64,000 nt of DNA. Origin: Macrostomum lignano. Its lineage: Eukaryota. The stretch is taken from NCBI GenBank assembly GCA_002269645.1, contig NIVC01001524.1, positions 210,047 to 274,046 on the forward strand, written 5' to 3'. The translations under genes and the position numbers were made by a program. The notes under the pieces were generated by a model. That model ran no database searches, was not told the DNA's origin, and saw only the letters and a list, made by a program, of their open reading frames with translations. Positions within the stretch are counted from its first letter, which is position 1. The number at the start of each line of letters is the position of its first letter. Positions 598 through 39,074 of this stretch are shown in pieces.

Positions 598-604
598 TTG
601 GAAC

Positions 605-18278: not shown

Positions 18279-18759
18279 CTTCAGCCGCAGACTCAGACTT
18301 AAACTTCTCTTTTTCAGCCACCAGCAGAGCGTGTTCAAAGCAGGCCCCAATTAGACTACTCAGTTCACGAGCAGCTCGAGGCGACTCAGTGGCGAACACT
18401 CGACACAGGGCAGGCGTGGACCGGCCACCCCCGGCCGCCTCTCTGGCCGAGAAGGCAAACAAAGACCGATCCGGATCGCAGCTGGCCATCGAGATTCGTC
18501 TCAGTGGGTGCGTGGATAGCAACTGATCCGCACTGGTACTCTGATTTGATGTCGAATAAATATCGATTCCTAAATATGATATTCTTAACTGAACTGGTTG
18601 TCCATCAGAAGCGGCTGGTAGGCTGGTAGGCAGCTGAACTGAACTGCCTGTAGTAACAGGAAATGTTGCCACGTGTCTAACATAGCGAACAGAATCTGCA
18701 GTGCGAAGCTGTTGCTGTACACAGCTGTCAGGTATCAAACAGTCTCGATTGCGGCGCAT
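18279..18759 (-). CDS. SH2D5: SH2D5-like, first coding exon (PTB/PID domain)
   Basis: HVATFPV...LLSTHPLRRISMASCDPDRSLFAFSAR...LCRVF resembles the SH2D5 PTB domain (YVGSFPV...LLMAHALRRI...QFAFMAR...FCHLF). Donor AAG|GTAAAC at 18278. Confidence 0.8.
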
Positions 18760-20713
18760 TGTTTTTTAATAGTTTCAGGAATATTTTAGTTGAAAGTTGC
18801 ATTTTTATTGTCTGCAGATAACTAGGGACATAAGTGCAATGCTATCAAGTCATTAACTAGTGTTGTGTAGTGTCTAACAACAGAAAATTAGAAATTAGAA
18901 AGTTTACTATATTTCTATTATCATTAGAGCAAGATGCAATTAAAAGCAAGGTCTTGTCAAGCATTAGGGTTACAGAAATCATAGTTTATTACTAGGCATA
19001 TGGTTGTATTGGCTAGTAGCTGATAAAAAAAAAAAAAAACAGAATAACATTGGATGTTAATGTTAATGTCTGATATTAATTTAGGCAATCTAAATATCCC
19101 ATTCTATATGTCTATTCATTCTATAGTTCTTCACAAGAAGCCTATAATTACCCAACAATTTTCATATCTATAAAAAATTAAATATTGAAAACAGTAAACT
19201 AAGAACCTCTTAGAACACCTTTTACTTTATGTCTACTATACCAGAAATGGAAGACCATCTTGTACATAAATGTGCAATACCCAGCCAAGCTGTTCAATCT
19301 GGCTGGCTAGCAATAGGCCTAGACAAGGCAAGTCACAAAACTGCCTACTCCAAAATTATAGACATGCTACTAACTAGATGAAAGGACATTTAGCCCAAAT
19401 AATATAGTCATTGATACCATTGCAATTTACTTAAATTAGATTAATTTTTGCTTAGGGTTTAATACATAAGTTGAAGTGGTTAAAGAATTTGTAAAATCTA
19501 GAGTCAAAAAGAGATTTAAAGGCCATTTATTTCAAAAAGACAATAAAGTTTATTATCATAAGGTGATTTATAAAACTAAAGAAGTAAAGTACAAACTTTT
19601 AGTCATTTGCCTTTCTGTTTATGTTGCAAATTGCAAAGATTTTTTCATGTTCTGCTGTAAGGGGGTCCATATGCCATAGCTGTAGCTGTAAGCAAAACTA
19701 TGGCTTATTCCAATCCTCCATATTCCATAGCCATAGGGACACCAATATTACTATATAGTAATAGCCATAGCCATAGTTTTAACAAAAAGTCTAGGAAACT
19801 AAATATTTTGAATCAAGAATATAACCTAGTGCTTAAACAACTGCCAAGGTATCTGCACTCTGGAAAAAAACTAGAAAACCCTGGAATATGCCCAAAAAAC
19901 CTATAGAATTAAGACTGAACACCACCATGTTTTAATTTATTAATATTTTTGTTTCTTTTCAATCTTTCAATCTTTTCAGTTTATAGTACTATCAATATTT
20001 AAAATGAAAAGCTGGCTAGAACTAAATTTATTTTGTTTTGGCTTAGTTATATAATATTATTTTTAGCTACAACTAGGGCAGTAGACAAACTATACTAACT
20101 AGGTATACTGCAGGTAGTTTACTTTTTAGGGAAGTTAGTATTTTTCTATTGCAAATGCAATCTTTACAAAATGCATCATAACTTTTTTATAGTTAGCTAA
20201 ATAGCTAATAAGTTAAAAACAAGTATATAGAACAAATTTTTATAAATAAATTATTACTGTGTACTATTATGCCTAGTGGCTCACATTTATTGGATGTCTA
20301 GCTCAATGCCAAGCTGCATCCTACTTATGCTCAATTTCTCTAGAAGGTGAAAGGAAACACATTTGCTACATATTGTGGCTTGTCCAAGGTTCTCCCCCTT
20401 TTTATGTTTACATTTAACTTCATTTTCTCTCACTTTATTTATCCATTTATTCAGTTCCTGCAACCCATTTAATTTAGCCTCAATGTACTGCAGTCTTGCC
20501 ATTTTATCTGTCACAAGTCATTTACATAATACTTATTGACCTACTTATTATATTAATCAATAAATGACATTAACTACAACTTTCATTTATTTGATTAACT
20601 AGCCCATAGCCTATCTTAAGTCATTTGCCAGTGGGGCAAAAACAACTTACAGTTCTCATCTCAAAGAAAGCTCTAAGATGTATTATTCTATAATACATAA
20701 ATTATGGTGGTGA

Positions 20714-22610
20714 CAGTGCTCTGGGTTTTTTGTGCAAATGGGTGCAAATAGCATCCTGGTCTTTAAAATTGCACCCTGAAATTTGACTCAGGGTGCAAAA
20801 AGCACACCAGAATTTTTTGCAAAGATGTGATACGGATTTAACAATTTAGTGTTATGGACATCTTAAGTCTGTAACTTCGTATTCTAAGAATTAGGCAGTA
20901 ATTTTTTCAATCCTTAATTAATGTAATTTAAGGAATTGTCAACTGTCGATTAAATTTTGGTAAGCAGAACCTGATAAATTGAATACTGAATAGTATTCAA
21001 TTCTAAGTTAGGCAACAAGCTCAGCATGGAGTTTAAGTTGTTTAATTATTCAAATAAAACAACTAATTATAAGCTTAATTCTAAATTAAATGATTTAATA
21101 ACATTGCTGCATTGGCATGATTTGATGATTGGCTTATAATATATGCTTAATATAGGGCTATAAGCTATAGTATAATTATATATAGACTACTCCCCATTGT
21201 AATAAACTTATAACTAATGAAATCTTTTATGTTTATTTAACATTTAACAATTAAAGACAATACAATTACATTAACAATCATCAACATTAACTGTGACAAT
21301 ATAGTTTGTTGCTGTTGTTTTGTTAACAATAATTTAGTTGGTTATTTCAATTTTGTCTGCCAACCTTATGCTTATTTAATGATAATTTATAGATGTTGTC
21401 ATAATCACATGTCAATGTCATAGACTATAGTCTATAGATATAATGTAATTGTTATTGTTGTAATTGTCACTCACTTGACAAAATGACATATATACTTGTA
21501 CTTATATATTTGTATATATATGTCATTTTACTCATTCACTAGTCTCATTCACAAAATATAGAACATTAAGGTTAAGGTTAATAAATTACATAAATTACCT
21601 TAATTATGGTAAAACCTGCTCTTGCTTCAGCTTAACAGACAATAGCTCAAGCTCCAAGCTTCAATAGGCTCAATCTGCTGTTTCAATGTCTTTCAAATCA
21701 AAAGTTTAAATTTTACTCTTTCCCTATTCCAGCCATAGGCCCATAGCCATAACTGATAGCCAACTAGATACTAGATTGATTACTGAATACTGAAACAGTT
21801 ATACTGATTACTGGGTACTGGCCAAGGCCCCAATCGAAATGACAACCCAACCATATCAAGCATCTGGTCCTAAAACTGCTCCTACTCCTCTTGCTCCTAG
21901 CGGCCCAGCAGCTTTAGCTGCAGATGGTGGAGGTGGAGGACAACAACAAGGTCCACCATTAAAGCAAGCTAAGCTAATGGGTTGGCTTGTCGTTGCCAAA
22001 GCTCCTTCATCTTCACTAGTTGCAGTTAAAGGTCCTGCACTTGCTGCTACTGTAGCTGCAGCTTTTAAGTCTGATTCTAACATAGACACACCAACACCAG
22101 CCACAGTCAAGGTCATCCAGCCTAACCCCAAGGACTTTAAGTCCACAAAAAAAAGATTGACTCTTTTCTAAACCCTGGTGGTTAAAGGAGTTTTGCTGGC
22201 TCCATTATACAAAATCTAGTGACACTGCGATGTGCAAAGACTGCGGCATCACATTTAAACCAGGCACTACAGGCTGGTAGCACTGCATCTTTGTAAAACA
22301 CTCTAGTTCTAAGACACACTAGGCAGTTTTACAGAAGCTGCAGCTGCAGAAGGACTGGAGTCAGGCTGTCGAGACTACAGTTAAGTGGGCATGACCTGAT
22401 GTAAAGTGTAAGTTTAGTTTGTCAGTCACTATTATTTTATGTTTTACTATACTTTCCAAAGTAAAGGAAACTTTGAAATATACTACGCTTGTATTAGTTT
22501 TAGACCAGTTTTTGTCTGCAGCAGTGCAGCGCATACTGGTCTTGAAAATTGCACCCTGAAATCTAGCGATTTCGCACCCAAGTTATGGACAAAAAAAACC
22601 CAGACAGTGC
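20714..22610 (+). mobile_element. Non-autonomous DNA transposon (hAT-like) with TIRs and a TTF zinc-finger relic
   Basis: Ends CAGTGCTCTGGGTTTTTT / AAAAAAAACCCAG. Subterminal AAATTGCACCCTGAAAT near both ends. Internal RLFSKPWWLKEFCWLHY...DTAMCKDC...KH..S..H relic at 22158-22310. Confidence 0.55.
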
Positions 22611-25600
22611 TACTTTACTAATAGTAATAATCTGAGAATTTTGACATACATTCATTTCAGTGTCTAAAGACCCAATTTGAACAATGCTACGACAATGACT
22701 ACCCTCCGCTGGAATTGAGAAGCCTAGCAGCCAAGGCAAAACAAGAGAAATTTTGTTGAGATTCATTGGTATAATTTTCCAGATTTATATGTGCAAACTC
22801 AATGCTTCAAGTAAATTTCAAAAAATTGCCCAACTGCAAGAAAAATTTAGTTTTTTTTTAATTTATTTTTCTCTGCTCCCACCTCAAGTAACAATACTTA
22901 ATTAATACACTACTGAAACAAAAGTACTATTGCTGAAATTTTTCATATTTAAAAAAGTTAAATAATGTTTGCTAGTAAGAGTTAAGAGTTTGCTAGTGTT
23001 TATTGTACTTTATTAGGTATAACCTATTTTTGCTTGGATTTACATTTTGACTAAGCCATTGTATTCTAAGAATGTTTCATCATTATAAGTTTTTAAGTTT
23101 ATAATACAGTTCACCAAATTATCTTTGTTTTACTTTATCTGTTTTTAATATTTTTTAAATAATAACTATGGCTATGGAAATCTAAAGAGTATGACAACAA
23201 CTATTATATTTCTGTAATTGTAGCCATAAGAGCAGCTATCTATTGTAGGCATATCTGTAGTTGCTATACAGACCTATTTTACCATATTTGCCTTAAGATC
23301 CCATAGCTGTAGCCGTAGCTATGGACTGGTAGAACACAAATTTTTCTATGCTTAATAAAGGCACATCATAAAAGCTTATGTAATGTTATAGTTTGTAGTG
23401 CCATCACAACAAGAAGTTGCCTTTTTATAGGGATCCAAAATAGGATACAATCAATGTAATGGTTTGTTCCAAGCATTTGGGCAACTTTTTAATGTTAAAT
23501 CTGTAGCACTTAAATTACCTTAGTGTTTTAGAAATTAGATAATCTTATTGAAGAGCTTGTTTAGGCATTGGTATTAGCAATCTTAGATCTTTCTGAGAAG
23601 TTGATAGATGCTAGATGAAGTAATTCTACAAAGTTCTGCCATTTCTTTGGATATCTATTGTGAATTGATCTCTAGAAAACCATAGATAAACTCAATGTCA
23701 CTCTTGGTCTATAGTTCTTGGGGTCTCCTAGATCTTGGCTCCTTTAATGTCAAAGTGCAACTATTCTTAAAGCAATTGTAGGGCCTACTACTTGTATATA
23801 GGCCTAGTCTACTCATATACTAGCAAAATGCATATTTGCTATACACATTTATATGCTACTAGTAGACTTGTGCAGCTAGTGTTTCTAAATTCTTATAGCC
23901 ATTCAGTTTAAATATAATACCACTTACTGTTGCTTGTTTGGTGGGTCATTTCATAATATTACTAAAATGTTTGCCAAAGAGAGAAACCAGTGGTAATAAA
24001 TATTGTGGTGAAAAAAAGAAATATATAACTAGCTCTATTGTGCACAAATAATTGCTACTAGCTATAGGGTAGCTATGGTAATAGCTTTAGCCATTAGAGT
24101 GATATCTATGATAGATAAAAAGCAATTTATTGCAAGAAGCTTTTGGGATACCCTTTGTTTTATAGATATGCAACCTTAAGAATCACCTAGGCCCTAGCTG
24201 TTTATATTGGCAATTATTATAGTCAGGCCTAATGTTTATATATTGTATTCATGAAAATATGAATATATATTTTCTTGTCTAAGTATCTAGAACTACACTT
24301 GGCACAATATATCTGTCAAGGAAACCTAATCTTCAATTAAATACTGAATAGACCTATGATTTGATTCCATTAATTTAATTTGTCTACTCTTTAGCCTTTA
24401 CTGCTTCAGGTTCATTGACCAGTATTGTTGCTGCAACCTATATATAGGCCTAACTCTTATTCTAATAACCTTAGCAAACATGACACAAACAGCACTAATA
24501 TTGGTATAGTGATATAGGTGTAGTAGTATGAAAGCTTCAATCTAAACAAAAATCACAAAAATGATTGTTTTAAATTAGTTGTAACGACCATGATTTCTTT
24601 TCTATTTCATATTTTCTATACTCACAATTCGAATCATTTTCTGAAATTCAGAAAGCTGACATGTTACAGCCACCTCACAAAATTTTGCTTGCAGTCAGAA
24701 AAAAAAACATTATGCTTGATTCCTGCATTCAGGCGTGCATTTAATGCACTCAGAAACAAAGCATTCTTCTAAAGAGAAGATGCAAACAAAATGACTACAC
24801 TAAATATATCTAAAAATTAAAGTAAACCTGATACAATTTACAAGCAATTAGCAAAGCATAATAGTTATCTAGGCATATACTAAAATAGTAAAGGCTGAAG
24901 GCGTACACATTTGAAGTGTATTTTTCATTCAGTAGGACTTGCATGCATGCGTTAATTTACAGTATAAACAATAGTAAACAGTGAACACCTTAATAAGTCA
25001 TCAAAGCATCAGGTCACCATTTTTGTTATCATTTAGTAAAGTTAATGAGACATCTAAAGTCTAGAGATAGCCAAAAGGTATTCTTGGGGTTAGTCCCCAG
25101 ACCTAATTTGAAATGGCTAGGGGCCTATTGACATGGTTAGATAGATTCATTCAATTTTTATGCAGATTGACATTAGGCCCTATGGCCTAGCCTAGACCTT
25201 AGTCTAAGAAAGTAGACATAATCAGTGCATTGGTGTCAATTTAAATGTCATTGTAGGCTAAATAATTTTTTCTTTGTCTATTTGGAGTTTCCTGAACCAT
25301 TACTAGGCTGCCTGGCCCTACCCTAGCCCTAACTAAAATATTCCCAATTTTGCTATCATTCTAAAACATTAAGTCTTTTAGGCCCTATGCGGCTATAGGC
25401 TATATAGTCCATACAGTAAGAAATTTCATTAAATTAAATCATCACTAATGGAGTCTCAATATAATATAGGAAAGGTATATAAGCAAGAAAATAAATTATA
25501 GATATCATTTTAGTTAACTATTGTTTAATAGACTGTAGGCCTAATTAATAACTGTTACCTATGAAAATAGTGACTTCATTATTTTAATCCTAAATAATGT

Positions 25601-25844
25601 ATTGGCCTGATATATAAATCTAAGCCTAGGTTTTTTTACACAAGTCAAAGAGTGAAATTATATGCCTTATGTCTAATTCTCTAATTTTATGGTTTAGAGT
25701 ATAATGTCTATTATTTTTATACAAACATTTTTTCATTTTTATTAAACATTACAAAAACATTTTTAATAACAAAGTAAAAATGTGAAACAATTATGTTCAT
25801 ACTTAATCATGTATATTGATTATCTATAACCACAACTACAACTG

Positions 25845-26172
25845 CATTCTGGGTTTTCTGTACACAGAGTGTGCATATGCATAAAAGTAGGTGTGGTTTA
25901 AGGGCAGTTTTATAACCATTTTTTAAATTAAATTAAAATTTAACCATGTTTAAGCTCATTTGCACTGCCTTAAAATATGAAATGAAATAACTCATATGAC
26001 TTATTAAGTCATATAGCCTATATGCCTATAGCCTTATATAAGACATGTCTATATATATTCCCAGTTTTCTGAAACAAGAGAAATTACACTCTGAGCCTTA
26101 AAATCGCACCTTGAAATTTGGCACAAGGTGCGATTTTGCACCTTGTCTCGGGCGAAAAAAACCCAGACCACA
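25845..26172. mobile_element. Short TIR element of the same family as 20714-22610
   Basis: TCTGGGTTTT ... AAAATCGCACCTTGAAATTTG ... AAAAAAACCCAGACCAC. Confidence 0.5.
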
Positions 26173-26631
26173 TTTATCAATTGATGACAATAATAACATA
26201 TAATAAAAGCTGTTATTAGTAGCAATTAATAAAACAACTAGGCTTATAACAACTGTATTAGACAATTAAGTAAACATAAACTTCCTCTATTAAATTTGGT
26301 AGTAGTAAGCTATCTGTTTTACTAGAGCCTAAAAAAAGGATTGTTTTAAAATTAAGCTAGGTTATAAGAACTTCTCAATAAGCCCAGCAGTTTTTATATT
26401 TCTGAAGTTTTGCTATAGGATTTAATATACAATACATAGATGGTTTAATATTTTTAAGAGCTTTAAGTCATAGTACCAATATAGGGCTTTCAAACTAAGA
26501 CTAGGCCTAACTAAAAGGGATTACTTGTTAGAAAGATTGTGATGCATATATAGTAATAACAACAATAATATATAGTGTCACAGGGTGCATTTCAAAGCCA
26601 AGTTGCAAATGAATGACACATTGCTAGCCAA

Positions 26632-26814
26632 TAGTGGTGGATCCAAGATTTTTAAACTAGGGGGGTGGTCCTGGGCAGATTGGCCTAGCTGTTTGGGGTG
26701 GCCCAAAATAAGCTCTAAAATAAGCCCAAAATTGCAATACGCCCCCTTATATGCAAGTTCAACCATGGCAAAAGAGAGGGGCAGCCACCCTCCCCCTCTC
26801 TGGATCTGCCACTG
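26632..26814. mobile_element. hAT-type MITE with 8-bp TSD CTAGCCAA
   Basis: TSD at 26624-26631 and 26815-26822. TIRs TAGTGGTGGATCCA / TGGATCTGCCACTG. Confidence 0.85.
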
Positions 26815-26824
26815 CTAGCCAAAT

Positions 26825-27145
26825 CTAGCTCTAGGCGGTAGAACTGGGTATGGATGATGTGGCCTAGTAGCGGAGTCACTGATGGCACAATAGGTTGCTT
26901 GGATAGACCAGGCTAGTGTAGCAATACAAAGCTGCTTTGGTCACTTGCTTATAGCCAGTCTTGAAGGCAGCACTCAGCAGGCCAGCATGCGCCATGTCAA
27001 CTTATTGTTTGAGCAACTCTATTAGTATTCAGGTCTTGGCATTGTATAGCAGGATGGTCTCAATCACCACATGGAACAATGCCATTCTGGTGGTCAAGTA
27101 GTGTATCAAACTGCAGGACTGCCCTTACAGAATGAAGGGCAGTCC
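26825..27145 (-). pseudogene. RTE-clade LINE RT relic, 3' part
   Basis: Reverse strand reads HSVRAVLQ...ALFHVVIETILLYNAKT*IL..LLKQ*VDMAHAGLLSAAF, an RTE thumb/C-terminal motif with stops. Confidence 0.7.
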
Positions 27146-30100
27146 TGTCTAATGACTCTCTTAGAAGGGTCAGCCTGATGATGGTGCGTTAAACTGAGAG
27201 GTAAACCTGAGCGTGGCGTGGGCAGACCAGCCTGCTGTTACTTGGTGGACAAGCAGGTAAGGCCACTGCCACCTCAGGATAGTGAAACTATGCTATGTTG
27301 AGGCAGAAGCTTGGCCGAAGCCTGGTTGACTGTTCAGTAATGGCGGCTAGATGCCGGGGGGCTCCAGTTCGAAAAATGGCTCCACTACTGGGGAAACCTG
27401 GTAGAGGGTGAACATTACTGATCAGGATTCCGGGCTAAAGCTTTGCTTCTAGTGCGGATGATTGTGAGGATTGTTCTGCCTTCGGATTGGGTGGCCCCCC
27501 GCACCCGGTTCAGTCTGGTGGTTCGATTCTCACCAAAGGGATCCTTGCTCCGTAGGTATGTCCTTGGAGTAGGGGGGACTTTGTTCGGATTGAAACACAG
27601 ATCAGGATCGGGCCTGTACACGCTATGGTCGGGTGCAGCTCGAACTTTAACACACTTTTTATCTAGTTGGCCTCCGCTTAGGCGGGTCCGTGTTTCGATG
27701 CGGATGTTGATGATCGCAGGGTAAAGGCACGATGGCAGAACTGGCTCGTCTTGGTGACGCCGGAGTGCTAATCCCTGTCTGACAGTGCTAGATGCCTCCA
27801 CGAGGCAAGAGTCGGGCAACGGAGTGCCGGGTATGTGTCTTTCCTCTGTTCTGGATCACCGCTTCGTCTTTTGCTCTCATCTTCAATCTGGCTTCATCTT
27901 CCTTTCACTCTCACTCTCACTCCCCTCTTCATATCATCTTCTTTTTCTTTCTACCTCTGCTCTTCTTCTTCTTCTCCTTCAAACGTACCTAGGTGCTGCG
28001 GCTGAATTCCACTGTTTAATTCGGGGGGCCTGGGTTAGCAGCCCGGGTCTTCTGTGACATCCTATTGCTACGACTAAAAATAACAATTCAGACCCGTCGG
28101 CCTCCGCTGATGGGCAAAATAGGTGTCACTCCAGGGTGATAGGTCAGGCCGGTGATGGGTACACCTGCAGCGAGTGTGACGGAAAATTTAGTACCAAAGC
28201 AGGGCTTAGCAATCATCAAAGACAGACTCATCCTGACTACTACCATAATACAAAATGCTCGGCCTTACCGGGCGCCAAAAAAAGGTGGTCAGATGAAGAA
28301 TTATATATATTAGCTAGTTTTGAAGCCAAATTTGATATTAACTTTGTTCCAGTCAACGACGCGGTGATGAAAGCAAAAATACTTCCAGGTAGAACTCTAG
28401 ATAGCATTAAGGGGGCCAGAAGAACCAAAACTTACAAATTACTTGTGGAGAAACTTAGGAACGAAGCATGTAATATAGAAAGCGATAATGATGAGATTCC
28501 AGAAGAAATTCAGTTAGCAGTTGCCACTGGCGTTAGAGGTAGTGTTGATGAGCTGAGAAAGGTTAGAAGAAAGCAATTTGACAAAAGACTAGAAAAGACA
28601 AAGAAAAACCTATCAGAGAAGTACAATGAGACTAGTAAGACGGAAACGAATCATGAAAACCAAATAAAAACAATTATAACTTCGAAAACTAACAAAAAAG
28701 ATGATTTATTACAGAGGCTAGAGGTGAGACCTTAGACAGTGGCTGGGCTTCGGGTCCTGAGGGTCCGGGTGCCTTGCCCACTATCTTCGAGTCAGGGGAG
28801 GTCGTTGGCCACTCAATTAAATATAATGTAACTGAAAATTCTGAAAACTACAAAAAAGTCAAATTAAATATGAAGACAGCTCGACGTCTGGCCTGGATTC
28901 GGGTCCGGCATCCGTTGGCCACTTGCCGAAGCTTAGCCTGGTTGGTCATGAAGGTGGCCAGACTCAAGCAGTCAGTTCATATAGTAAGATCGGCAATAAT
29001 AAAAATACTAAACAGGATATTCCAATGGAAGTGAAAAATAAAATCTGGGGCTCAGACTCAGAAGATAGCCTTGAGAATGATGACATAGATCAGCAGACTA
29101 CTATTCCTGAGAACAGTTGTCAATCTAAAACCATAGGTAGACATAGTAATGAACATCTTATTACCTGGCTCAGAGAGAATAAGTGTGAAGGACTAGGGGA
29201 CTATTGCAACAATATCTGCAAGCTCTTAGAAGAAGGAGAAAATGAAGCTACATGTAATTTAATAGAAAGTCTACTACCAACGGTTCCTGGGATCAAAAAA
29301 CCTATAATGAAAAAAAAGAAAAATTAAAAAAAGCTAAAAACAAGAAGGAAAAAAGACGTAGAGCCTTTGCAGAAATGCAAAGGATTTATGAAAAAAATAG
29401 AAAGAGAGCAGTAGAAGCAGTCTTCTCAGGGTCTTGGAAAAATTGGGATGAAGATGACGAATCTAACATTAGTGTAGAAGAGCATACTAAATTTTGGGGC
29501 AATCTCATCTCAAATCCTTCAGGTACAGATGGGAGGCTGATTAAGCCTATTTGCGAGCCTATTACCAGTTTAGCCAACCCGATTAAATTAGAGGAGGTAC
29601 ATTGGGCTGTCAAAGACTTTGGAAAGACAGCAGCGGATCCAGACGGTCTTGGGGTAGAAACTATTAAGCTAGTAGATAGGAAGGTTTTAACATATTTATT
29701 TAATGGCATTATGGCTTGTGGTACAACACCAGCCTCTTTCAAACACTCGAGAACAATACTTATTCCAAAAGTAGACAAACCAGCGTCACCAGCAGAATTT
29801 AGACCGCTTTCCATAGGCAACCTTATTTGTAGATCTTTCCATAAGATCTTAGCTAGACGGCTTGCTGCAGAGGTCAGTATTAGTAGTGTCCAGAGAGGCT
29901 TTAAACTAGGTTTAGACGGGGTTGGCACAAATCATTTCCTAATTGAAAACCTTCTAGCCGAGGCCAGAGCTGGTAACTCACCTCTGTTCTTGGCCTTCCT
30001 AGACCTAAAAAAAGCCTTTGATTCAGTCAACCACCCTACTTTAATTAGAGCAGCTAGAAGAGTTGGTATACCAGAATTATTAATTAAATATCTAGATAAT

Positions 30101-32445
30101 CTATATACTAATACCACTGATATTTTTGGTGCTACTACCAAGTTAGGAAGGGGAGTCAAACAAGGCGACCCTTTGTCACCTATTCTATTTAACTTTGTTA
30201 TTGATGAAGTACTTGGCACACTCGACCCGCACATAGCCTTTCCAATTGCTCAAGAAAGAGTTAACTCTGCAGCATTTGCTGATGATATGGCTATCTGCGC
30301 GTCGACTGAAGCCGGATTGAATAATCATCTTAAAACTTTTGAAGAGGCCCTTGCTCCAACCAGGCTCAATGTCAACATCAAGAAAAGTGCTACTATCTCG
30401 ATCGTGTGGGACGGAAAAAATAAAAGATGGCTCAATAATCAAGATAAAATTTTTAAAATCTATAATCAGGAACTTCCTAGAATCGGCCTTCAAAACAGTT
30501 ACAAATATTTGGGTATCGAACTCAATGCCAAGGGGCAAGTTAAATCGGGACTTAATGTATTGAAAGACATGCTAGCCAAACTCAAACTCGTTGCCCTCTT
30601 AGGCCTCAGCAACGTATGTATTTCCTCTCTACCAATATTATTCCTAAGGTTAACTACATTCTTACTAACGGCAGAATACATAAAAAAACTCTGCTAGAAG
30701 CTGATATCTTAGTTAGGAAGTGGGTTATCAATGTGCTCAGACTGCCTAAAGATACTCCGTCACCTATGATTCATGCCAGAGTTCGTGACGGAGATCTGGG
30801 TATCAACTCCTTCACTACATGTATTCCGTATTTTAAAAATATAAAATTTAGTAGTCTTATTAACTGTAGCGACTCTCTTATTAGCCAAATAGCGAACCAA
30901 CCTAAGTTTGCCAACAAATTTAAACTAGATAAGTCTTTATGTGTTTTTAATGGAATGAACAAAATTCATCTTTATTGGAAAGAGAAACTTAACAACACTA
31001 TCGATGGCAGAGGCCTTGCTGACGCCGCCAAAGTCCCTTTCGTACACGATTGGGTTTCCGAGGGCTCCAGCATCGTCTCCTATGAAATGTACGTTAAATG
31101 CCTCAAAATTAGATTGAACCTCTGGCCTACCAGGGCCCGTGCGTCCAGGGGAAGAGGCCGAGCGCCCAATTGTGATGCCGGATGCCGCAGGATTGAGGGC
31201 TTGGGGCACATTTTGCAAAGCTGCAACCGTACTTTTGACAAGAGAAACTTTAGGCACCACAAAATTGTGGACTATATTTTTGATAAACTTGAATCTAGAG
31301 CGTACCAACCTATAAAAGAGCAGTTAATTTCTACTAATGAAGGGGGCCGCAGACCAGACCTGATTTGGAGAAGGGGCAATACCACCTGGATAGGGGATGT
31401 CTCAATAGTTTCTGATGCGGGTCTGGGAATTGGGATCATGGACAAGGCAGCTAACAACAAAAGCAATTATTATAATAAGCCTTGCATCAAAAAGTGGGCG
31501 CAGGATCACTATTGTATCGAATCACCTGATCAGTCTGGATTCAAAAGCGTAGGCCTAATTTGGAATTGGAGGGGATGTATGGAGAAAAAAACTGCACAAA
31601 TTTTGTCTAGCCCAGGATTCACGAAAGCAGAAATGAAACTTATGTCTATAATGGTACTCAAAGGTGGTGTCTATGCAGTGGAGGTATTTCATAGGAGGAC
31701 TGTAAATTACGGCATTCTTTCCAAAGGTTAAATGTTGCTTGGGGTCCATAATATTACTTCTTAGGTACTAACTTCTCCAACTTTCGAACTATTTGTTTTA
31801 ACTTTGTTTAATAGTCCTATGTAATCATTAGCTATTATGTCTAACTTATTTAATTTGTCACACTCTCCACTGTTTGGCGTGGCTTTGCACTTGCTCATAT
31901 GACGGGGGGCTCCGCGCCTCCCCAACATGGCCCGTCTCCTTTGGAGTTTTGTATGGGTTTGCCGGTTTCAGGCCAGAAAACTGGACAGACTGTGGCTATG
32001 CTTTCGGGTGGTGTGTGCTGGTCCCCCAGGTGGTAGCCAGGGGTGAGGTGTGGCGCGTGTCTGTCGTCTGGTCTTCCTTTCCTTCTCCTTTGCTGTCTTC
32101 TTCTTCACTTTTTCAATTTATTGTGTTGCTTCTGCCTACCCTGTCTGCGACAGGCTCTGGGCCATTTTAATGTACTACTTTTTGCTTTTTCTTTTATCTT
32201 TGTCTATCCTTTTGTTTGGTTGCTGCTCTTCCTCTTTTGCTTTTGTTGTCGTTTTTTGCTGGTTGTCTTTCCTTTTTTCCATCTTCCCTTTCGGCATTGT
32301 GCGCCATCTACCTGCTGTTTTCTTCATGTTCCCTGTATCCTGTGCGCTTATTGCCTCTTTGGCATGAATGCATAATACACAGACGAAGTTTATATACTGT
32401 TGAGGTCAACTCTTAGACCACTCCGTTTGTCACGGTTACAAGACA
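27146..32445. mobile_element. 5.3 kb composite insertion splitting the RTE (TGTCT...AGACA ends), containing the R2-like element
   Basis: RTE homology stops at 27145 and resumes at 32446 with a diverged ~6-bp duplication (GCAGTC/ATAGCC). Perfect 5-bp terminal inverted repeat. Confidence 0.55.
28058..31731 (+). mobile_element. R2-clade non-LTR retrotransposon coding region (ZF-Myb-RT-CCHC-RLE), disrupted by several frameshifts/stops
   Basis: C2H2 CSECDGKFSTKAGLSNHQRQTH; Myb KRWSDEE...PGRTLDSIKGAR; RT motifs PGPDG-like ADPDG, FLDLKKAFDSV, GVKQGDPLSP, AFADD, YKYLG; CDAGC..EGLGHILQSC; RHHKI; RRPDL..GDVSI. Flanks are not rDNA. Confidence 0.9.
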
Positions 32446-33140
32446 ATAGCCAAAGCAAGCCTGCAGCAATGCTATATATCCTTATAGATGCTGGGAACCA
32501 GACCACCAAGGTAAACTAACTGCTGACAATGTGGAAGCTCTGTTACCTATCTATTAGAACCTTGGCACAAAATTACAGCCTTGATGTTGTCTTGCATGCA
32601 GAGCAAGCAAGGATAGCAAGGATAGGATAGCAAGGTGGGGTTGTCAATATAGCTAAGCATGCTGAGCTACCTTTCTGGTTGATGTCAACCCACCCATTGC
32701 TGCAATAGAAAGTCATTGTTATTGGTAGGAAAAACAATCTGTAGCACCCTATCAAGCACCAGAACAAGCAGGAATGGAGGAAGTGTATCTCCTGGAGGAA
32801 GTCTCAAAGAGGTCCAATAGGCTGTCTAGTGTTAAAATAGCTTTTGTATCATGGTACATCACTGTGATAGTGGATATAAGCTATTTTGGCATATTGTACA
32901 CATAGAGCACCTTTGGGAGCATATACCTGATGACTAGGTCAAATGGCTTCTTGAAATCTATGAAGATAACAATCAAGAATGACTGCTGTATCTGTGCTTC
33001 ATATATAATAGAACCAATATTACTTGCTAGGAAACATATTTTCAATAGTCTATATAGTTTTCTTTTCTACCAATGTTATACATTGTATACTATATAATAT
33101 TCCATGTATATATAAGATTTAAATGGAAAATTATGGGGTA
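32446..33140 (-). pseudogene. RTE-clade LINE RT relic, 5' part
   Basis: Reverse strand reads IVIFIDFKKPFD, LSYIDN (for YADD) and QLVYLGGLVP; many stops. Confidence 0.7.
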
Positions 33141-34718
33141 CTTCATGTTACTTCATTATTTGTTTTAGGCCTACTAAATTTTATCAAATAGTCAATGGTA
33201 TTCCTTGGAATAAACATGGATTCCCCTAGGCTAGAATCTGCACTTTGCATTCTTATAGGCAACCTAGCAGTATTTCAGATGACCTAATACTCATATAGGC
33301 AAATACATACAAAGACATACAATGACAATAACTGACTTATTTATATATTTTGTGTGGGTTACATTCAGGAGCCCAACTTAAAAAATATATAGAAATTTTT
33401 TTCAATATTTTTCTACAGTGGCCTATAATACCAAGGTTAATAAGAAAGGGATGTATAAATACTTCCAATTTTGGTGTAAAAAAGTTTTTATTTTCAGTCA
33501 TTTTTATAGAATTTATAGAATCAGTAAAATGTGTTTTATTTCTAATATTTTGTATCTATATATCTTTTAATCCCATCTATACATAGACAATCCTTTATTT
33601 TATTGAGTTAACTATTGTTCCACAAAATCTTACACTTTCTTATTTATAGATACAACTTGAAAATAGTCTATTCTTTTTTAAATTAGTCACCATGGCTACT
33701 GTTGGGAGTGCTAATCAGCCTGGGGACAAACTAGTAGTCAGGTGAAGGGCCAGGAGCAGGAGGCTAGAGGAGTGGCAAGTGCCCAAAGTGGTTATTTGTT
33801 ATATTTAGATAAAATGTGTCCTATCATATGAATTATTTACTATAACTAGCTTATATTTATTTATATATTTTAGGCCAGTAAAAAGCTTTATCTTGTTTAT
33901 TGTCACTTTTTCTGAGTATTTGTTGTTTTCACCTGCTAAGGGATTAATGTTACTTTTTTCAGTTTTAGTACATACAAAAAAATTATCCAGATTACTGTTT
34001 AAGTAATAAAATATTAATGAACACATTTTTCCCTCACCTTTCCAGTTCATACTAATTGAGAGGGCATAATGCTAAGCTCTAGTTGGACTGGATATGTTTC
34101 AGTTACACACAAAGCATTGAGAAAAGCATCAAAGGTAACATTCTTTTTTATATAATCATTTAAAGAATTTATTGAATTCATTATTTCATTGCATTAAGTA
34201 ATTGAGTTATTTTTTCATGTTGCTCTTGTAATAGTACACAAATGCCCAAAGTGTAAGTACATGTTTGCACTATCATGACTTATATTGTAAGAACTGATAA
34301 GTGTGTGTGGCATTCTGAAATCTGTACTATCTCTGCAGTTGAGATTAACAGTAGGAACCAAGCCATTTTGTACCAAGCCATTTTTCCACCCATCGAACTA
34401 CCAAGAGGGGGGAGGGGGAATTCCTATTCTTGGAATCTGGCAGAATTCCCCTCCCCCCTATGACATTTTTTGCTGCACCAGAATGGAGCAACACAGGCAC
34501 ACAAAATTCAAGAACATGGGCCAACGTTTTGTTGCACACCTTCTCAAACAAGAATCAAGTTGCCAGCCCTCCAGACTGTTGAGATATTTGATGATTCTGC
34601 CAGAAGGTTGGATTTTTCTCATAAGCGCTAGTGTATTCAGTATACCCCTGTGTGCCAATCAGCACTGTGCCTCAGCACAGCCTTGCAATGCCTTTAAATT
34701 TCATCAGAACATTGACTA

Positions 34719-35415
34719 CACGTGTCTGCATCAGCTCTGACTTTGTTGGTCATTAACCTTCACCCAGATGGAGCTTCTGGACCTTCAACAGGTGGCACCA
34801 AATGACTATGGACACCCTGATACAAATTTCACAAGTTTTGCTAATCAAGCCTTGACAGTGGGCAAGCCTCAACTGCGGGACAGCCTTAGCTAGTCTCTCA
34901 AGCATTTAGTCATCACTCGGACGCTGTTGGCACCTTCAACAGGTGGCATCAGATGACTATGGACATCTCTTCTGTCTTAAAAGTTACTAATTTTTTTAAA
35001 AATTAAATAAAATCATACATCTAGGTGTTCATAGTCATGATTCCCTTCCTTGAAAGTGCCAATGATGGCTGAATGATGACAGAATGCTTGAGAACCTAGT
35101 TGACAATGCCTAGCAGTTGAGGTTTGCCCATTATTGAAACTTGATAAGAAAAAAAAGACAAAGTTGCAAAAGGATGTTCATAGTCATCTGTTGCCACCTG
35201 TTGAAGGTGCCAACGGCGTTGGGGTGATAACAGAATGCCCGAGAGATTAGCTGAGGGTGTCCAGAAGTTGAGGCTTGCCTATTGTCAAGGCTTGATCAGT
35301 GAAACTTTGCATCAGGGTGTCCATGGTCACTTGGTGTCATCTGTTGAAGGCCCAGAAGCTCCGTCTGGGTGAAGGTTAGTGACCAACAAAGTCAGAGCTG
35401 ATGCAGACACAAGTG
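34719..35415. mobile_element. Foldback/MITE-like element with ~250-bp imperfect inverted arms
   Basis: GTGTCTGCATCAGCTCTGACTTTGTTGGTC... at the left end is mirrored by ...GACCAACAAAGTCAGAGCTGATGCAGACAC at the right end. A further subunit copy lies at about 35020-35125. Confidence 0.8.
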
Positions 35416-38400
35416 CCTTAATGGTTAGTATAAAAACTAATAAACCTTTATGATTGAAACATGAAAAAAGCAACTACACTTTTGTGTATGATCTTTGCCA
35501 CTATAATTACACCTAGGGGGCACAGGTAAAGCATCATCAAAACAAACAAAACAAAATTTTTCATCAGTTGTACTTGCTTGCTTAAGGAATGTTATATAAA
35601 TGCAAGATACTAGAATCTTTTAAAAACAAGTTTATCTTTCAGAGAAAAAATAATTGGTTTGATGTTTGGTTTAGCCATTTATTTTAGTGCACATTTTTAC
35701 GTTATAATCTAAGCAGTGATTTTGTATATTCATCAAGCTAATAAAAAATATTGTATTCAAATTTAACTTTAAAAGTTAATATACTTCTTAAAAATTAAAC
35801 CAATTACAAAGTTTAAAAATATCTAAAAAAGATTTTGATTTTTTATAATACATTTCAACTTTCTTTACATATCTCTAGTTGCAAACAACTTTAAATTTTT
35901 TTTAAACTTTGTTGATTATAAAATTCTATTCTAGTGAGGTAAAAAATAATTTTTACACTTCTACTTCAAGTATTATAAGCATACATGTGCAACATCTAAA
36001 ATTATGCTCATTGTATGACTTGGTTTTGACTAAAAATGCAACTTAGTTTGTTCTTTTTGTGACTTAATAATTTGTACAACTTACCTAAACATTTATGCAA
36101 ATTACCTAATCATTTTTGCAATTTGGTTTTATTGCAACTTGTTTTAATTTGCTTTATGATTTTCATTTGACATTTACCTATAGGCCTACCACTCTTCTAC
36201 TCTATACTAAATCTTTAAATATTAAACATACTAAAATGATATTAAATAACATCAATAAATGTAATTGTTATCTTTATTAAATAAAACATACTCCAGCAAT
36301 AATAATAAATTTAACCTATAAGACCTGACTGCATTATCTATATTGTTATCAAAAACAAAAATATTAATTAAATACAGATATCTGAAGAATAGGCCTAAAT
36401 TTATTTTTTGCAAAATAAAACTTACTTGTTAATGTTTATATTCTATAATTATAGTACTAATTAACTTAATAATATTTAATCTTGAAAATTCAAATACTTG
36501 GATTAGAACTAAGGCAGACTTTTTTTCTTTATGGCTATAATAATAAGGTTCTATATAAAGCACTTCATTTTTTTATTTAGACCAAGGTCTATATAAATAA
36601 AAAATGCCTAACTTTAGTTTTTTATAAAGCTTTATAAAGCTGGACAGCATGAAAAAGGAGCTATGCATGTCAATAAAAGTGATTTAAACAAGCAGTACTT
36701 TTAAATAAAGGTCCTAGCTAACTGCCTTGGAAATTGCTTGATTGACTAATTGCTTTTCAGCCTGCTCTATCTTCTGGGGAACATTTGCCTTTTGCTTCTT
36801 TAGTTCTTTATGCTTATTACCCAGCACTTTAATCTTATAGGCCTATTGATATTGCTTTAGCAGCTTTTTAGCCACCTTGCACTTCTCATTGTTTTTCACT
36901 CTGGCTTTTATAATAGGCCTATCTTTTTTCTCAAATAATGTTTAGTCAGTTTAGTGTCACTTTAATTGATCCACTTCAAGTTCAATTTGCTCAGCAAGTT
37001 AGCATTTGCAAGTGACCTCATTGGCCAGGTCTTGTTAGGTTTTCTGCTTTTTTAGTTGCTGGATTACCATTGCCCATATATAGGCATACACTATGCAGAG
37101 AGAACAAGAGCATTTGAGATTTCAAAGTCCATATACATAAAACCAGTTTGCTTTAGAAAGAAGCCAAGAACAAGAAGCAAGCAAGAATTAATTTAAACCT
37201 CTTCCAAACCATTACATTTCTTTGTCAGCAAGTCAAAGAGCAAATTTAAGACTTTTTCCATTGCCACATGGCATTTTTAGAGCATTGCCATTGGCAATAA
37301 GCTTTGCTATTAATGGGTATTGCTCAATGCTATAAATGTGGCATTAGAACTTAGTGGTAGCCTAGTGGGATCTAGACAATTTATATAGTATATTAGTATA
37401 TTAGGCTAGGCCTAGTATATTTGATATGGCTAAAAATTTATGCAGGTTTTGCTAAAAATAGAATATATTCCATAATTTCCACATCATAGGCAAAATTTCT
37501 AGTCAGATGAAGGATTTCCATAGCAAGTGGTAGTAGCACTAGGCCTATCTGCCTGGAAGTTGGGATTGCCCTTTTTCCTACTTTTAAAATCCTAGATTGA
37601 CCAAGCTGTTTCAAACCTTTTTATATATAAATAATTCTATAAATATGTGAGTCTATGACCATGGTCACTACATTGTCATTAGTTGCTAGATGAGGAAACC
37701 AAGTTAAGCCTACTAAAGTCAAGGGGCCTACTAATGCCTAATGACAATGGCAGTCTAGCAGATAGGCCCTAGGTCTAAAACAATATACCTTGTTATAAGA
37801 CTAGCGGCTAGGCCTTAAGAATAAGAAGGGCAGGGGGAACAGACCAACTATAGCATAGGACTAAACTTACATTTAGACATAGGCTTTCTCTAGCTAAAGT
37901 CATAGCCTCATACACATAGGCCTAAAGACTAGGTAGTAGTAGTAGGACCTAATAGTAAATAGGTAACTTGAGATCACTTTAGATTTCAGAAGAATTGATA
38001 GGCCTAGGTAGGCCTAGAAGCTAAGCTATAGGCCTAGCCCTAATTGTAGGCCTAGGTCCTATTCTATAGAATTGTAGGGGCCTATGGCTATATATGAAGA
38101 TGAGAATTTTCAGCAAAGCCTAGACCTTAGGCTTAGTTAGCTGCACAGCTAAGCAAAGCTGCAGAGTAAATAACTTCCACAAGGAGAATGTAGGCCTATT
38201 CTGCCAAGATTTTGCATAGCATAGGCCTAGGCCTATGCCTATGGCTATGGAAAAAATAATTTATGGAGGAATATGGAATACAAAAAAATTTATAAATTTA
38301 TACAGTATCGCTTCAAAAAAAGGAGGATCCGCAGCAGTTTCAGTCCAAGTTATTGTGGTAGTTGGGTACCACCGATTGATTATTTGCTCTCATTTGATTT

Positions 38401-39074
38401 TAATAACATTACAGTTTCTGGACGATAAAATTATGCGTACCCTATTCTGGTCCCCGTTAGTCCACTCCCTGGCGCAAGTCATGACGTATTTTTGCCCCCT
38501 TTCTGTCCCCCTTGCCCCATTTCCTGGCGCTATATGACCAAATTGTGTTTTCTTTTGTTTTACTATGTATTTCTGCGGTAATTTTGTTGAATCCTTTTTT
38601 GGCCTTTTGAGTTTTCGCCCCTCCCCAGTTTCTGGGCCTCGCCAGCCTTTTTGTGTCCTGTCTCCGGGTATTTATTCCCGCCCCTTGCGCCTGTCCCCTC
38701 CTCATTTCGTTGCGTTGCGTTTCGTTTCGTTTCGTTCGTTCGTCTTTTCCTTTCCGTTGCCTTTGCCTCCCCGTCTCCTTCTGTGACGTCCCGGCCTCTA
38801 TAACTTCCTTCAGGGATTTCCTTTTTTACTAGTTTAATAACTTTAAGATAACTCAACTAACTACTGCCTGACCGAAAACTAATTTAGTTTAACTTTTTTT
38901 TAAGCGAAGGTCCGCACTAGCTGCGGCACCCCTGATCATCTATCGTCGGTTGTCTCTTAATTTACGCGCGTGAGACATAGTATAATATTTTAGCTGTCTT
39001 TTGTAATAACTCGTTAAGCAATAAACTCGCATTAATTTACTACAATCCGTTCTTCGATTAAAAGCCATAGCTTA

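What the first reader, a model, noticed from the sequence alone, without database searches (positions are those of the whole stretch)
18800..38250. Sharply bounded ~19 kb C-to-T hypermutated domain with a RIP-like (CpG plus CpA) signature in an animal genome
Seen in sequence: CpG almost vanishes (1 in 37681-38250; also rare across 19-26 kb) and CTA/TAG/TAGGCCTA words are abundant. The switch back to CpG-rich DNA at about 38.3 kb occurs within roughly 100 bp. Dead elements in the domain show C:G>T:A changes where the ancestral state can be inferred, including outside CpG: CAG/CAA>TAG/TAA stops, RT YADD>YIDN, and TIR CAGT>TAGT. Established: 5mC deamination depletes CpG, while CpA>TpA hypermutation of repeats is the hallmark of fungal RIP and is not an established animal mechanism. 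Inference: this is a silenced TE domain subject to dense non-CpG methylation or a targeted deaminase.
Basis: partly seen in the sequence, partly recalled or inferred. Interest (0 to 1): 0.85.

Follow-up and report, generated by a model that had tools for sequence, protein, structure and literature searches.

The report
CpG-free old DNA island, not RIP
A sharply bounded 19.5-kb stretch between genes in an animal genome has lost almost every CpG. This looks like the ordinary scar of long-term local DNA methylation rather than a fungal-style RIP process, though it also carries an unexplained excess of the 8-letter palindrome TAGGCCTA.

Summary
Between 18,756 and 38,309 CpG collapses, with CpG-free gaps of 2.0-2.1 kb against about 47 CpGs expected. 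Both edges are sharp, at most about 60 bp on the right.

The block is layered, not uniform:
- About 9.9 kb is old, non-coding DNA: 30% GC, CpG o/e 0.05.
- About 3.5 kb is younger inserts: CpG o/e 0.18, TpG/CpA o/e 1.37.
- A 5.1-kb nearly intact non-LTR retrotransposon sits in the middle: CpG o/e 0.60.

Everything outside, including dead TEs, keeps CpG o/e 0.85-1.09.

The RIP-like reading fails every direct test. (CpA+TpG)/(ApC+GpT) is 1.29, not below 1.03. Repeat copies inside versus outside differ directionally only at CpG; non-CpG transitions are 8 versus 10. Duplicated arms inside the block show 30 transitions to 24 transversions with no CpA bias.

Best explanation: region-targeted germline CpG methylation and 5mC deamination of an old intergenic island in an otherwise unmethylated, flatworm-like genome.

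The odd residue is TAGGCCTA: 21 copies, all inside the block, against 0.7 expected. C>T mutation cannot produce it. The same word is about 35-fold enriched in many eukaryote-like metagenome contigs with normal CpG, so it is a separate, unexplained phenomenon.

The parts
18756..38308 (.). CpG-depleted block as a whole, bounded by the last and first normally spaced CpGs
   Evidence: CpG positions and gap statistics; composition.
18900..27290 (.). Left sub-block: mostly old AT-rich non-coding DNA, with younger, GC-richer patches at 21750-22750 and 26500-27290
   Evidence: The old layer as a whole (five segments, 9.9 kb, partly in this sub-block) has GC 0.30 and CpG o/e 0.05. The younger in-block set as a whole has GC 0.43 and CpG o/e 0.18. 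No Pfam domains in any frame.
27290..32434 (+). Later insertion: nearly intact non-LTR retrotransposon. It has a C2H2 zinc-finger region (28058-28732), an RT ORF (29258-30694) and a C-terminal ORF (30556-31728). The element ends are approximate.
   Evidence: RVT_1 E=6e-31; zf-C2H2. Best relatives are 36-43% identical, including M. lignano C2H2/RT proteins. It retains 65 of 78 conserved columns. CpG o/e is 0.60. A related element in contig L001 also has CpG o/e 0.5-0.7 in a CpG-normal background.
32435..38250 (.). Right sub-block: old AT-rich CpG-free DNA plus the RT fragment and the foldback
   Evidence: No CpG in 32,434-34,393 and only one in 35,701-38,308.
32500..33000 (-). Dead RT fragment (FIDFKKPFD ... 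LPPGDTLPPFL ... SYIDN), frameshifted, with no CpG
   Evidence: tblastn hit to P0050, E=5e-7 for this 3-kb subject (1.1e-5 against the whole window). Read by eye. Too short for Pfam.
34717..35415 (.). Foldback (inverted-repeat) element inside the block, partly CpG-decayed
   Evidence: Inverted repeats I1-I3. Arms differ by 30 transitions and 24 transversions. The 250-bp bins here have CpG o/e 0.09-0.31.
20551..20798 (+). In-block copy of a short repeat family. Other in-block pieces are at 22530-22631 and 26055-26194. An outside copy lies at 39012-39184.
   Evidence: blastn and purine/pyrimidine-space alignments. The inside copy has lost all the CpGs of the outside copy.
24660..24794 (+). In-block copy of a second repeat whose outside copy lies inverted at 39646-39791
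   Evidence: (I4).
37407..38235 (.). Densest cluster of the palindrome TAGGCCTA (11 of the 21 copies), ending at the right boundary. It includes the iterated form TAGGCCTAGGCCTA at 38222.
18037..18759 (-). Left flank: ORF with a PTB/PID domain. Its ATG lies about 3 bp from the last CpG before the block.
   Evidence: Pfam PID E=7.7e-7. No homologues found. CpG o/e 0.7-0.9.
39012..39791 (.). Right flank: CpG-rich region (o/e 1.2-1.5) holding the CpG-intact copies of the two repeats, 0.8-1.5 kb outside the boundary
42330..42716 (-). Control: dead LTR-type RT remnant outside the block that keeps normal CpG
   Evidence: RVT_1 E=8e-4. Motif read. CpG o/e about 1.0 at 42-43 kb.

Best explanation
The block is an old intergenic island. 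It holds about 14 kb of degraded, non-coding, AT-rich DNA into which TEs have inserted at different times. In the germline it has long been kept CpG-methylated, while the surrounding genome is essentially unmethylated.

Spontaneous deamination of 5-methylcytosine converts CpG to TpG/CpA on both strands much faster than other changes. As a result:
- the oldest DNA has reached about zero CpG;
- younger inserts are part-way there and show the expected TpG/CpA surplus;
- copies of the same repeats just outside the block keep their CpGs.

The low GC of the oldest layer is best read as ordinary AT-biased neutral decay of old, unconstrained DNA added to the CpG loss. The sharp edges coincide with CpG-rich, probably unmethylated sequence: a gene start on the left and a CpG-dense kilobase on the right.

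Shown here: the CpG loss, its locality, its direction, its strand symmetry and its grading with insert age. Inferred: that methylation is the cause, and that it is targeted to this island.
For: - CpG o/e is 0.05 (old layer), 0.18 (younger inserts) and 0.60 (LINE), against 0.85-1.09 in five outside sets, which include genes and intergenic DNA; the 42-43 kb kilobase holding the dead LTR-type RT remnant has CpG o/e 1.00.
- The younger inserts keep GC 0.43 but have TpG/CpA o/e 1.37, the classical reciprocal product.
- In two inside/outside repeat pairs the outside copies carry 31 C/G positions in CpG and the inside copies 2. Twelve of the 31 are C>T or G>A in the inside copy. Non-CpG transitions are symmetric, 8 versus 10.
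- GC and AT skews are near zero across the block, so both strands are hit equally.
- By trinucleotide context, C-retention odds (inside versus outside) are 0.05-0.12 for NCG and at least 0.46 for all other contexts.
- Boundaries: the last CpG is at 18,755, next to the ATG of the PID ORF. The first CpG on the right is at 38,309, followed by o/e 0.9-1.5.
- The closest proteins are from the flatworm Macrostomum lignano. That species is reported to retain DNMT1 and DNMT3 and to have low-level 5mC of unknown pattern (PMC11292947, PMC9246332).
Against: - No methylation data exist for this locus, and the organism is not identified. The best protein match is only 52% identical.
- In most invertebrates methylation marks gene bodies, not intergenic DNA. 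No gene could be found in the block.
- A CpG o/e near 0.0 over 2 kb is more extreme than the vertebrate equilibrium of about 0.2.
- In the oldest layer TpG/CpA o/e is only 1.12, and TAG o/e is 1.5. A slower secondary loss of CpA/TpG, especially CAG>TAG (odds 0.30), cannot be excluded there.
- An edge of 60 bp or less, coinciding exactly with the end of the TAGGCCTA-rich wording, looks more like a structural junction than the edge of a chromatin domain.
- The intermediate CpG of the LINE may be intrinsic to its family, so it is weak evidence for decay in place.
Confidence: 0.55

Rival explanations
1. RIP-like or dedicated-deaminase hypermutation: an enzyme converted C to T in CpG and CpA contexts across a targeted, repeat-rich domain in one or a few bursts.
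For: - TpA/ApT is 1.09 in the old layer, above the 0.89 threshold.
- TAG and CTAG o/e rise stepwise: outside 0.7, LINE 1.05, younger inserts 1.13, old layer 1.50.
- After CpG, the contexts with the lowest C retention are CAG (odds 0.30) and CTG (0.54).
- Composition bookkeeping fits complete CpG loss plus about 29% CpA/TpG>TpA, if the ancestor resembled the flanks (my arithmetic).
- The boundaries are very sharp.
Against: - (CpA+TpG)/(ApC+GpT) is 1.29-1.46, so the composite RIP index is negative.
- CpA/TpG is not depleted (o/e 1.12-1.37).
- Non-CpG transitions are symmetric between inside and outside copies.
- Duplicated arms inside the block differ by 30 transitions and 24 transversions. Mismatch rates are CpG 0.25, CpC 0.13, CpA 0.10 and CpT 0.08.
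- Polarised changes show only a mild AT bias and no CpA preference.
- All C/G-containing dinucleotides fall and ApT rises 52%, so the GC loss is general, not CpA-specific.
- The 'ancestor resembled the flanks' assumption is untestable here, and the flanks are partly coding, where TAG is avoided.
Confidence: 0.08
2. A block with a separate history: the old layer is ancient DNA whose CpG-free, AT-rich, TAGGCCTA-rich composition was set earlier or elsewhere. The sharp edges are rearrangement or insertion junctions with younger DNA, and nothing special acts on the locus today.
For: - The right-hand edge is 60 bp or less and coincides with an abrupt change of wording.
- TAGGCCTA is absent from the roughly 45 kb of the window outside the block.
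- Much of the rest of the window is evidently young or constrained: minisatellite arrays, tandem ASC genes and TEs.
- There is no detectable homology between the old layer and the rest of the window, even in purine/pyrimidine space.
Against: - Sequences that entered the block later (the foldback, short repeats, the RT fragment and GC-rich patches) are also CpG-depleted (o/e 0-0.3).
- Sister copies of two of these repeats, 0.8-1.5 kb beyond the edge, keep all their CpGs. The CpG-removing condition therefore persisted at this locus after those insertions.
Confidence: 0.2
3. Technical artefact: a chimeric join with foreign DNA, or systematic base-calling errors at modified bases in a long-read assembly.
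For: An abrupt composition change at both ends; the genome is not in the protein collections searched; raw reads are not available.
Against: - The block shares two repeat families with its right flank.
- It hosts a retrotransposon whose named relatives include M. lignano proteins, the source of the flanking ASC gene's only hit.
- Base-calling errors would not lower GC to 30% or remove all CpGs.
- There are no rRNA, tRNA or mitochondrial/bacterial protein signals.
Confidence: 0.05

Closest known systems
Mosaic DNA methylation of invertebrate genomes and the resulting CpG-depleted (low CpG o/e) domains
   Same: An otherwise CpG-replete genome with a sharply delimited compartment of very low CpG o/e. 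The loss is directional (CpG>TpG/CpA) and strand-symmetric, and inserts acquire the signature with residence time.
   Different: The known compartments are mainly bodies of broadly expressed genes. TE methylation is reported only in some species (PMC11292947). This block is intergenic, has no detectable gene, and is depleted far below the usual values.
Vertebrate-type TE/heterochromatin CpG methylation and CpG decay of old repeats
   Same: Non-genic and TE-derived DNA loses CpG in proportion to age. Edges lie at CpG-rich, presumably unmethylated sequence near a gene start.
   Different: In vertebrates the whole genome is affected and unmethylated islands are the exception. Here the methylated-looking island is the exception.
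Fungal repeat-induced point mutation (RIP)
   Same: A sharply bounded, AT-enriched, TpA-rich block that includes repeats; many stop-generating words (TAG/TAA).
   Different: The CpA/TpG substrate is not depleted, and the composite index is negative. Transitions do not dominate between duplicated copies. The directional change is confined to CpG. No RIP is known in animals.
Tc1/mariner excision footprints (the TA target duplication flanking 2-4 nt of transposon end; PMC7913693)
   Same: TAGGCCTA has the form TA + 4 nt + TA. It has no flanking consensus. Iterated forms such as TAGGCCTAGGCCTA would follow from re-insertion into a scar.
   Different: No element with TA|GGCC...GGCC|TA ends was found in the window or in 103 motif-rich contigs. 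A density of 1-2 per kb is very high for scars. This is a resemblance only.

Membership tests
RIP (repeat-induced point mutation) | Depletion of the CpA/TpG substrate: (CpA+TpG)/(ApC+GpT) below about 1.03 (threshold recalled from the Neurospora literature) | tested here: not met
   1.29 in the old layer, 1.46 in the younger inserts, 1.15-1.29 outside; 1.1-1.6 in every 1-kb bin of the block.
RIP (repeat-induced point mutation) | Product excess: TpA/ApT above about 0.89 | tested here: met
   1.09 in the old layer. However, intergenic DNA outside (0.90-0.95) also passes, so the index does not discriminate here.
RIP (repeat-induced point mutation) | Differences between duplicated copies are almost all C:G>T:A transitions | tested here: not met
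   Foldback arms: 30 transitions, 24 transversions. Inside/outside pairs: 30 transitions, 31 transversions. Polarised singletons: 10 C>T, 7 T>C, 7 transversions.
RIP (repeat-induced point mutation) | A RID/DNMT-like enzyme acting premeiotically on duplicated DNA | not testable with these tools
   The genome is not available, and no such gene lies in the window.
5mC-deamination CpG decay of a methylated domain | CpG o/e far below that of flanking DNA of the same genome | tested here: met
   0.05-0.18 inside versus 0.85-1.09 outside; gap statistics P about 1e-20.
5mC-deamination CpG decay of a methylated domain | Reciprocal excess of TpG/CpA | tested here: inconclusive
   Clear in the younger inserts (1.37, against 1.02-1.17 outside) but only 1.12 in the oldest layer.
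5mC-deamination CpG decay of a methylated domain | Directional CpG>TpG/CpA changes in resident copies relative to copies elsewhere, with no such bias at other contexts | tested here: met
   12 of 31 CpG positions changed in the inside copies. Non-CpG changes are 8 of 91 versus 10 of 99 in reverse. The sample is small: two pairs, about 320 aligned bp.
5mC-deamination CpG decay of a methylated domain | Strand symmetry | tested here: met
   GC skew -0.07 to +0.01 and AT skew at most 0.14 in absolute value in the CpG-free parts.
5mC-deamination CpG decay of a methylated domain | 5mC actually present on the domain in the germline, and DNMT1/DNMT3 encoded by the genome | not testable with these tools
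   Only indirect support: the nearest identifiable relative, M. lignano, is reported to keep DNMT1 and DNMT3 and to have low 5mC (PMC11292947, PMC9246332).
APOBEC/AID-type cytidine deaminase editing | TpC (or WRC) context preference and strand-coordinated clusters | tested here: not met
   C-retention odds are TCA 0.53, ACA 0.47 and CCA 0.46, so there is no TpC preference. No strand skew.
Organelle or foreign DNA insert (NUMT, bacterial or viral DNA) | Recognisable rRNA, tRNA or protein-coding remnants of the donor | tested here: not met
   No Rfam hit above threshold, no tRNA, and no Pfam domain in six frames of the CpG-free parts. For two minus-strand frames only stop-free segments of at least 28 aa were scanned.
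Tc1/mariner excision scars (as an explanation of TAGGCCTA only) | TA on both sides of 2-4 nt derived from the transposon ends | tested here: met
   19 of 27 isolated GGCC runs in the old layer are flanked by TA on both sides, against about 5% for other G/C runs.
Tc1/mariner excision scars (as an explanation of TAGGCCTA only) | Existence of donor elements with matching termini (TA|GGCC...GGCC|TA with terminal inverted repeats) | tested here: not met
   None found in the window or in 103 motif-rich contigs totalling 393 kb. A whole genome was not searched.

The most novel reading that the evidence does not exclude
Two things remain possible. (1) This is a flatworm-like animal that aims dense DNA methylation at a non-genic island rather than at gene bodies, with a slower secondary CAG/CTG>TAG/CTA decay in the oldest DNA. 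That would be a footprint of non-CpG (CWG-type) methylation. (2) The palindrome TAGGCCTA is produced or maintained by an undescribed process. Candidates are scars of a TA-targeting transposon with GGCC ends, or a binding or targeting word. The process would operate in several invertebrate-like genomes and here would mark only the oldest DNA.
Probability: 0.2. Interest if true: 0.6.

Novelty: new member of a known kind. Interest (0 to 1): 0.4.

Why it matters
The genome-wide pattern of DNA methylation has been described as unknown in free-living flatworms (PMC9246332, a 2022 review). If this window comes from one, a CpG-erased non-genic island in a CpG-replete genome would be a cheap sequence-only pointer to where methylation goes, and it suggests targets other than gene bodies. 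It also removes a tempting but wrong claim of RIP in an animal. Separately, the roughly 35-fold excess of TAGGCCTA, shared with many uncharacterised eukaryote-like contigs, is a concrete and easily counted anomaly with no explanation yet.

Tried and rejected
- **Gene-body methylation of a gene spanning the block.** No Pfam domains in six-frame translations of the CpG-free parts. The adjacent PID exon itself is CpG-normal.
- **NUMT, bacterial or viral insert.** No rRNA, tRNA or proteins. The only sub-threshold Rfam hit (MIR7533, 35 versus 230 bits) is simply the foldback hairpin.
- **Hidden transition-degraded copies of flank sequences.** A purine/pyrimidine-alphabet self-search found only the two known pairs and three short in-block repeats.
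- **TAGGCCTA as C>T debris.** Its density is 5-6 times that of all its possible transition precursors outside, and for the 8-mer there are no precursors at all. Other TAG-containing words reach only 0.2-0.8 times.
- **TAGGCCTA as part of a longer repeat.** No flanking consensus and no tandem period.
- **TAGGCCTA as MITE ends.** No matching terminal inverted repeats.
- **Decay of the LINE in place, tested at conserved arginine codons.** Only two informative columns. A related element elsewhere also has low CpG, so the LINE is not usable as a clock.
- **Identifying the organism or the genome.** The exact-protein look-up failed. The PID ORF has no homologues. The window shares no DNA with the motif-rich contigs.
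- **Literature.** Wasik et al. 2015 (the M. lignano methylation data) is not held. Searching for TAGGCCTA returned only primer sequences.


Full report
**1. Observation**

A 1-kb and 250-bp scan of the window shows CpG o/e of 0.8-1.2 almost everywhere. The exceptions are simple-sequence arrays and one block.
- In the block the last normally spaced CpG on the left is at 18,755 and the first on the right is at 38,309.
- The largest CpG-free gaps in the window all lie inside it: 2,105 bp (35,700-37,805), 2,078 bp (18,755-20,833) and 1,961 bp (32,433-34,394).
- For CpG-poor test stretches of 1.75-2.25 kb lying in or across those gaps, base composition predicts 45-48 CpGs; 0 or 1 were observed (P about 1e-20 each).
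- GC falls from 44.6% outside to 30-33% in the CpG-free parts.
- The CTA/TAG/TAGGCCTA wording is also real.

**2. Anatomy: three layers, not one domain**

| Layer | Coordinates | Size | GC | CpG o/e | TpG/CpA o/e | TAG o/e | CTAG o/e |
|---|---|---|---|---|---|---|---|
| Old | 18,900-20,700; 20,850-21,700; 22,750-26,000; 33,000-34,250; 35,500-38,250 | 9.9 kb | 30.1% | 0.05 (11 CpGs) | 1.12 | 1.50 | 2.63 |
| Younger inserts | 21,750-22,750; 26,500-27,250; 32,500-33,000; 34,250-35,500 | 3.5 kb | 43% | 0.18 | 1.37 | 1.13 | 1.89 |
| Retrotransposon | about 27,290-32,434 | 5.1 kb | 42.6% | 0.60 | 1.01 | 1.05 | 1.23 |

- The old layer also has TpA o/e 1.02 and GpC o/e 1.68.
- The younger set includes a dead RT fragment and a foldback element.
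- The retrotransposon is a nearly intact non-LTR element with a C2H2 zinc-finger region and an RT domain (E=6e-31).
- Six-frame translations of the CpG-free parts match no Pfam family. There are no tRNA or rRNA genes. The only coding relic is about 500 bp of an RT.

**3. Context**

- The window is animal DNA. It carries a tandem family of intronless DEG/ENaC (ASC) genes.
- Their only database match is a Macrostomum lignano protein at 52% identity. M. lignano C2H2/RT proteins are among the relatives of the retrotransposon.
- The genome itself is not in the collections. 'Flatworm-like' is therefore an inference.
- The left edge abuts the ATG of an ORF with a PTB/PID domain (18,037-18,759, minus strand).
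- The right edge is followed by a kilobase with CpG o/e 0.9-1.5.
- A dead LTR-type RT remnant at 42,330-42,716 keeps normal CpG. CpG loss is therefore a property of the block, not of TEs in general.

**4. Tests of the RIP-like claim**

(a) Indices.
- (CpA+TpG)/(ApC+GpT) is 1.29 (old layer) and 1.46 (younger inserts). RIP lowers this index below about 1.03.
- TpA/ApT is 1.09, but ordinary intergenic DNA here already reaches 0.90-0.95.

(b) Direction. Two short repeats have one copy inside and one outside the block: 20,551-20,720 versus 39,012-39,184, and 24,660-24,794 versus 39,646-39,791.
- In the aligned parts the outside copies hold 31 C/G positions in CpG and the inside copies hold 2.
- Twelve of the 31 are C>T or G>A in the inside copy.
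- At non-CpG positions the inside copy has T/A for outside C/G at 8 of 91 positions. The reverse occurs at 10 of 99.

(c) Duplicates inside the block.
- The foldback arms differ by 30 transitions and 24 transversions. Mismatch rates are CpG 0.25, CpC 0.13, CpA 0.10 and CpT 0.08.
- Majority-rule polarisation of four sub-copies gives 10 C>T/G>A, 7 T>C/A>G and 7 transversions. The C>T changes fall in CpC (5), CpA (3) and CpT (2).

(d) Dead RT fragment.
- Around the YADD motif (read here as YIDNPT), two changes, the second D>N and the A>T two residues after the motif, are G>A changes that would be CpG-type for a GAC-GAC-ATH-GCN ancestor. That ancestor is my inference from the RTE consensus as I recall it.
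- Several other departures from the usual RT motifs are transversions.

None of this is RIP-like. The samples are small, and I say so.

**5.

- Relative to the flanks, the contexts that lose most C after CpG are CAG (odds 0.30) and CTG (0.54).
- TAG and CTAG o/e rise stepwise with CpG loss.
- My arithmetic shows the old layer's composition could be reached from flank-like DNA by complete CpG loss plus conversion of about 29% of CpA/TpG to TpA.
- However, every C/G-containing dinucleotide is reduced (GpC -31%, GpA/TpC -31%, CpC -21%) and ApT rises 52%. The GC loss is general.
- The flank baseline is partly coding, where TAG is avoided and CAG is favoured.
- A slow secondary CWG-type decay in the oldest DNA is therefore not excluded, but it is not demonstrated.

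**6. TAGGCCTA is a separate matter**

- There are 21 exact copies, all between 19,314 and 38,235, against 0.70 expected.
- In the old layer 19 of 27 isolated GGCC runs are flanked by TA on both sides. The figure is about 5% for other G/C runs.
- There is no consensus beyond the 8-mer.
- Iterated forms (TAGGCCTAGGCCTA) and a second enriched word (TAGCCATA, (CCATAG)n) occur.
- Its density is 5-6 times the summed density of all its transition precursors in the flanks, and for the 8-mer no precursors exist there. It is not C>T debris.
By my estimate about one is expected by chance.
- Most of these contigs are eukaryote-like: GC 0.41-0.46, low ORF coverage, CpG o/e about 1.
- In 103 of them, away from the ascertained clusters, the word occurs 174 times in 363 kb against 5 expected. 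Local CpG is not lowered (0.88 versus 0.93).
- The window shares no DNA with these contigs.
- The word's excess is thus a property of certain genomes and is not linked to CpG loss. In this window it marks only the oldest DNA.
- The TA + 4 nt + TA form recalls Tc1/mariner excision scars (2-4 bp footprints, PMC7913693). No donor element was found.

**7. Mechanism and rivals**

I commit to region-targeted germline CpG methylation with 5mC deamination, acting for a long time on an old intergenic island, plus ordinary AT-biased decay (confidence 0.55).
- *Separate history* (0.2). This rival explains the knife-edge boundary and the coincidence with the TAGGCCTA wording. It is weakened because later inserts inside are CpG-poor while sister copies 0.8-1.5 kb outside are not.
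- *RIP-like hypermutation* (0.08). It fails the tests above.
- *Artefact or chimera* (0.05). It is unlikely because the block shares repeats with its flank and hosts a retrotransposon with relatives in the species that gives the flanking ASC gene's only database hit.

**8. Comparison and verdict**

- The block behaves like the low-CpG compartment of mosaic invertebrate methylomes, or like old vertebrate repeats.
- It differs in being intergenic, gene-free and unusually complete.
- It is not a member of the RIP family: two defining features were tested and not met.
- It is a new instance of a known kind, of moderate interest. It carries one truly unexplained side observation, the TAGGCCTA word.

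Noticed in passing
window 19314-38235; loci L002-L121: The palindrome TAGGCCTA is about 30-fold over-represented in the window and confined to the CpG-free block. It is about 35-fold over-represented in at least 100 eukaryote-like metagenome contigs with normal CpG (several JGI sample series). No explanation was found.
   Followed up: partly
window 1-17141 and 60863-61647: Seven kinds of minisatellite array (periods 16, 18, 20, 23, 28, 33 and 40 bp; up to 97 copies) fill about 8 kb of the window (7 kb of it in the first 17 kb). Several units lack CpG and mimic CpG depletion in coarse scans.
   Followed up: no
window 45707-47317, 51162-52823; fragments near 43896-44009 and 55396-55509: A tandem family of intronless DEG/ENaC (amiloride-sensitive channel) genes: two long ORFs and at least two further partial copies. 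The best database match is only 52% identical (M. lignano).
   Followed up: partly
window 27290-32434; L001 10001-14000: The retrotransposon has an N-terminal C2H2 finger, and no AP-endonuclease domain was seen in the ORFs scanned (28136-28735, 29375-31731; 28.7-29.3 kb was not scanned). This suggests an R2-like, possibly site-specific lineage. A 38%-identical relative in an unrelated contig also has CpG o/e 0.5-0.7 within CpG-normal DNA, so low CpG may be intrinsic to the family.
   Followed up: partly
window 6106-8825: Two long ORFs (323 and 583 aa) in a GC-rich (53-56%), CpG-rich stretch have no Pfam match. Their nature is unknown.
   Followed up: no
window 18037-18759 (-): An ORF with a weak PTB/PID domain match (E=7.7e-7) but no detectable homologues in the 5.8-billion-protein collection. 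Its start codon sits exactly at the left edge of the CpG-free block.
   Followed up: partly
window 39306-39338 and 40633-40665: A 33-nt GC-rich direct repeat (97% identical) 1,327 bp apart in the CpG-rich right flank. It may mark the ends of an element.
   Followed up: no
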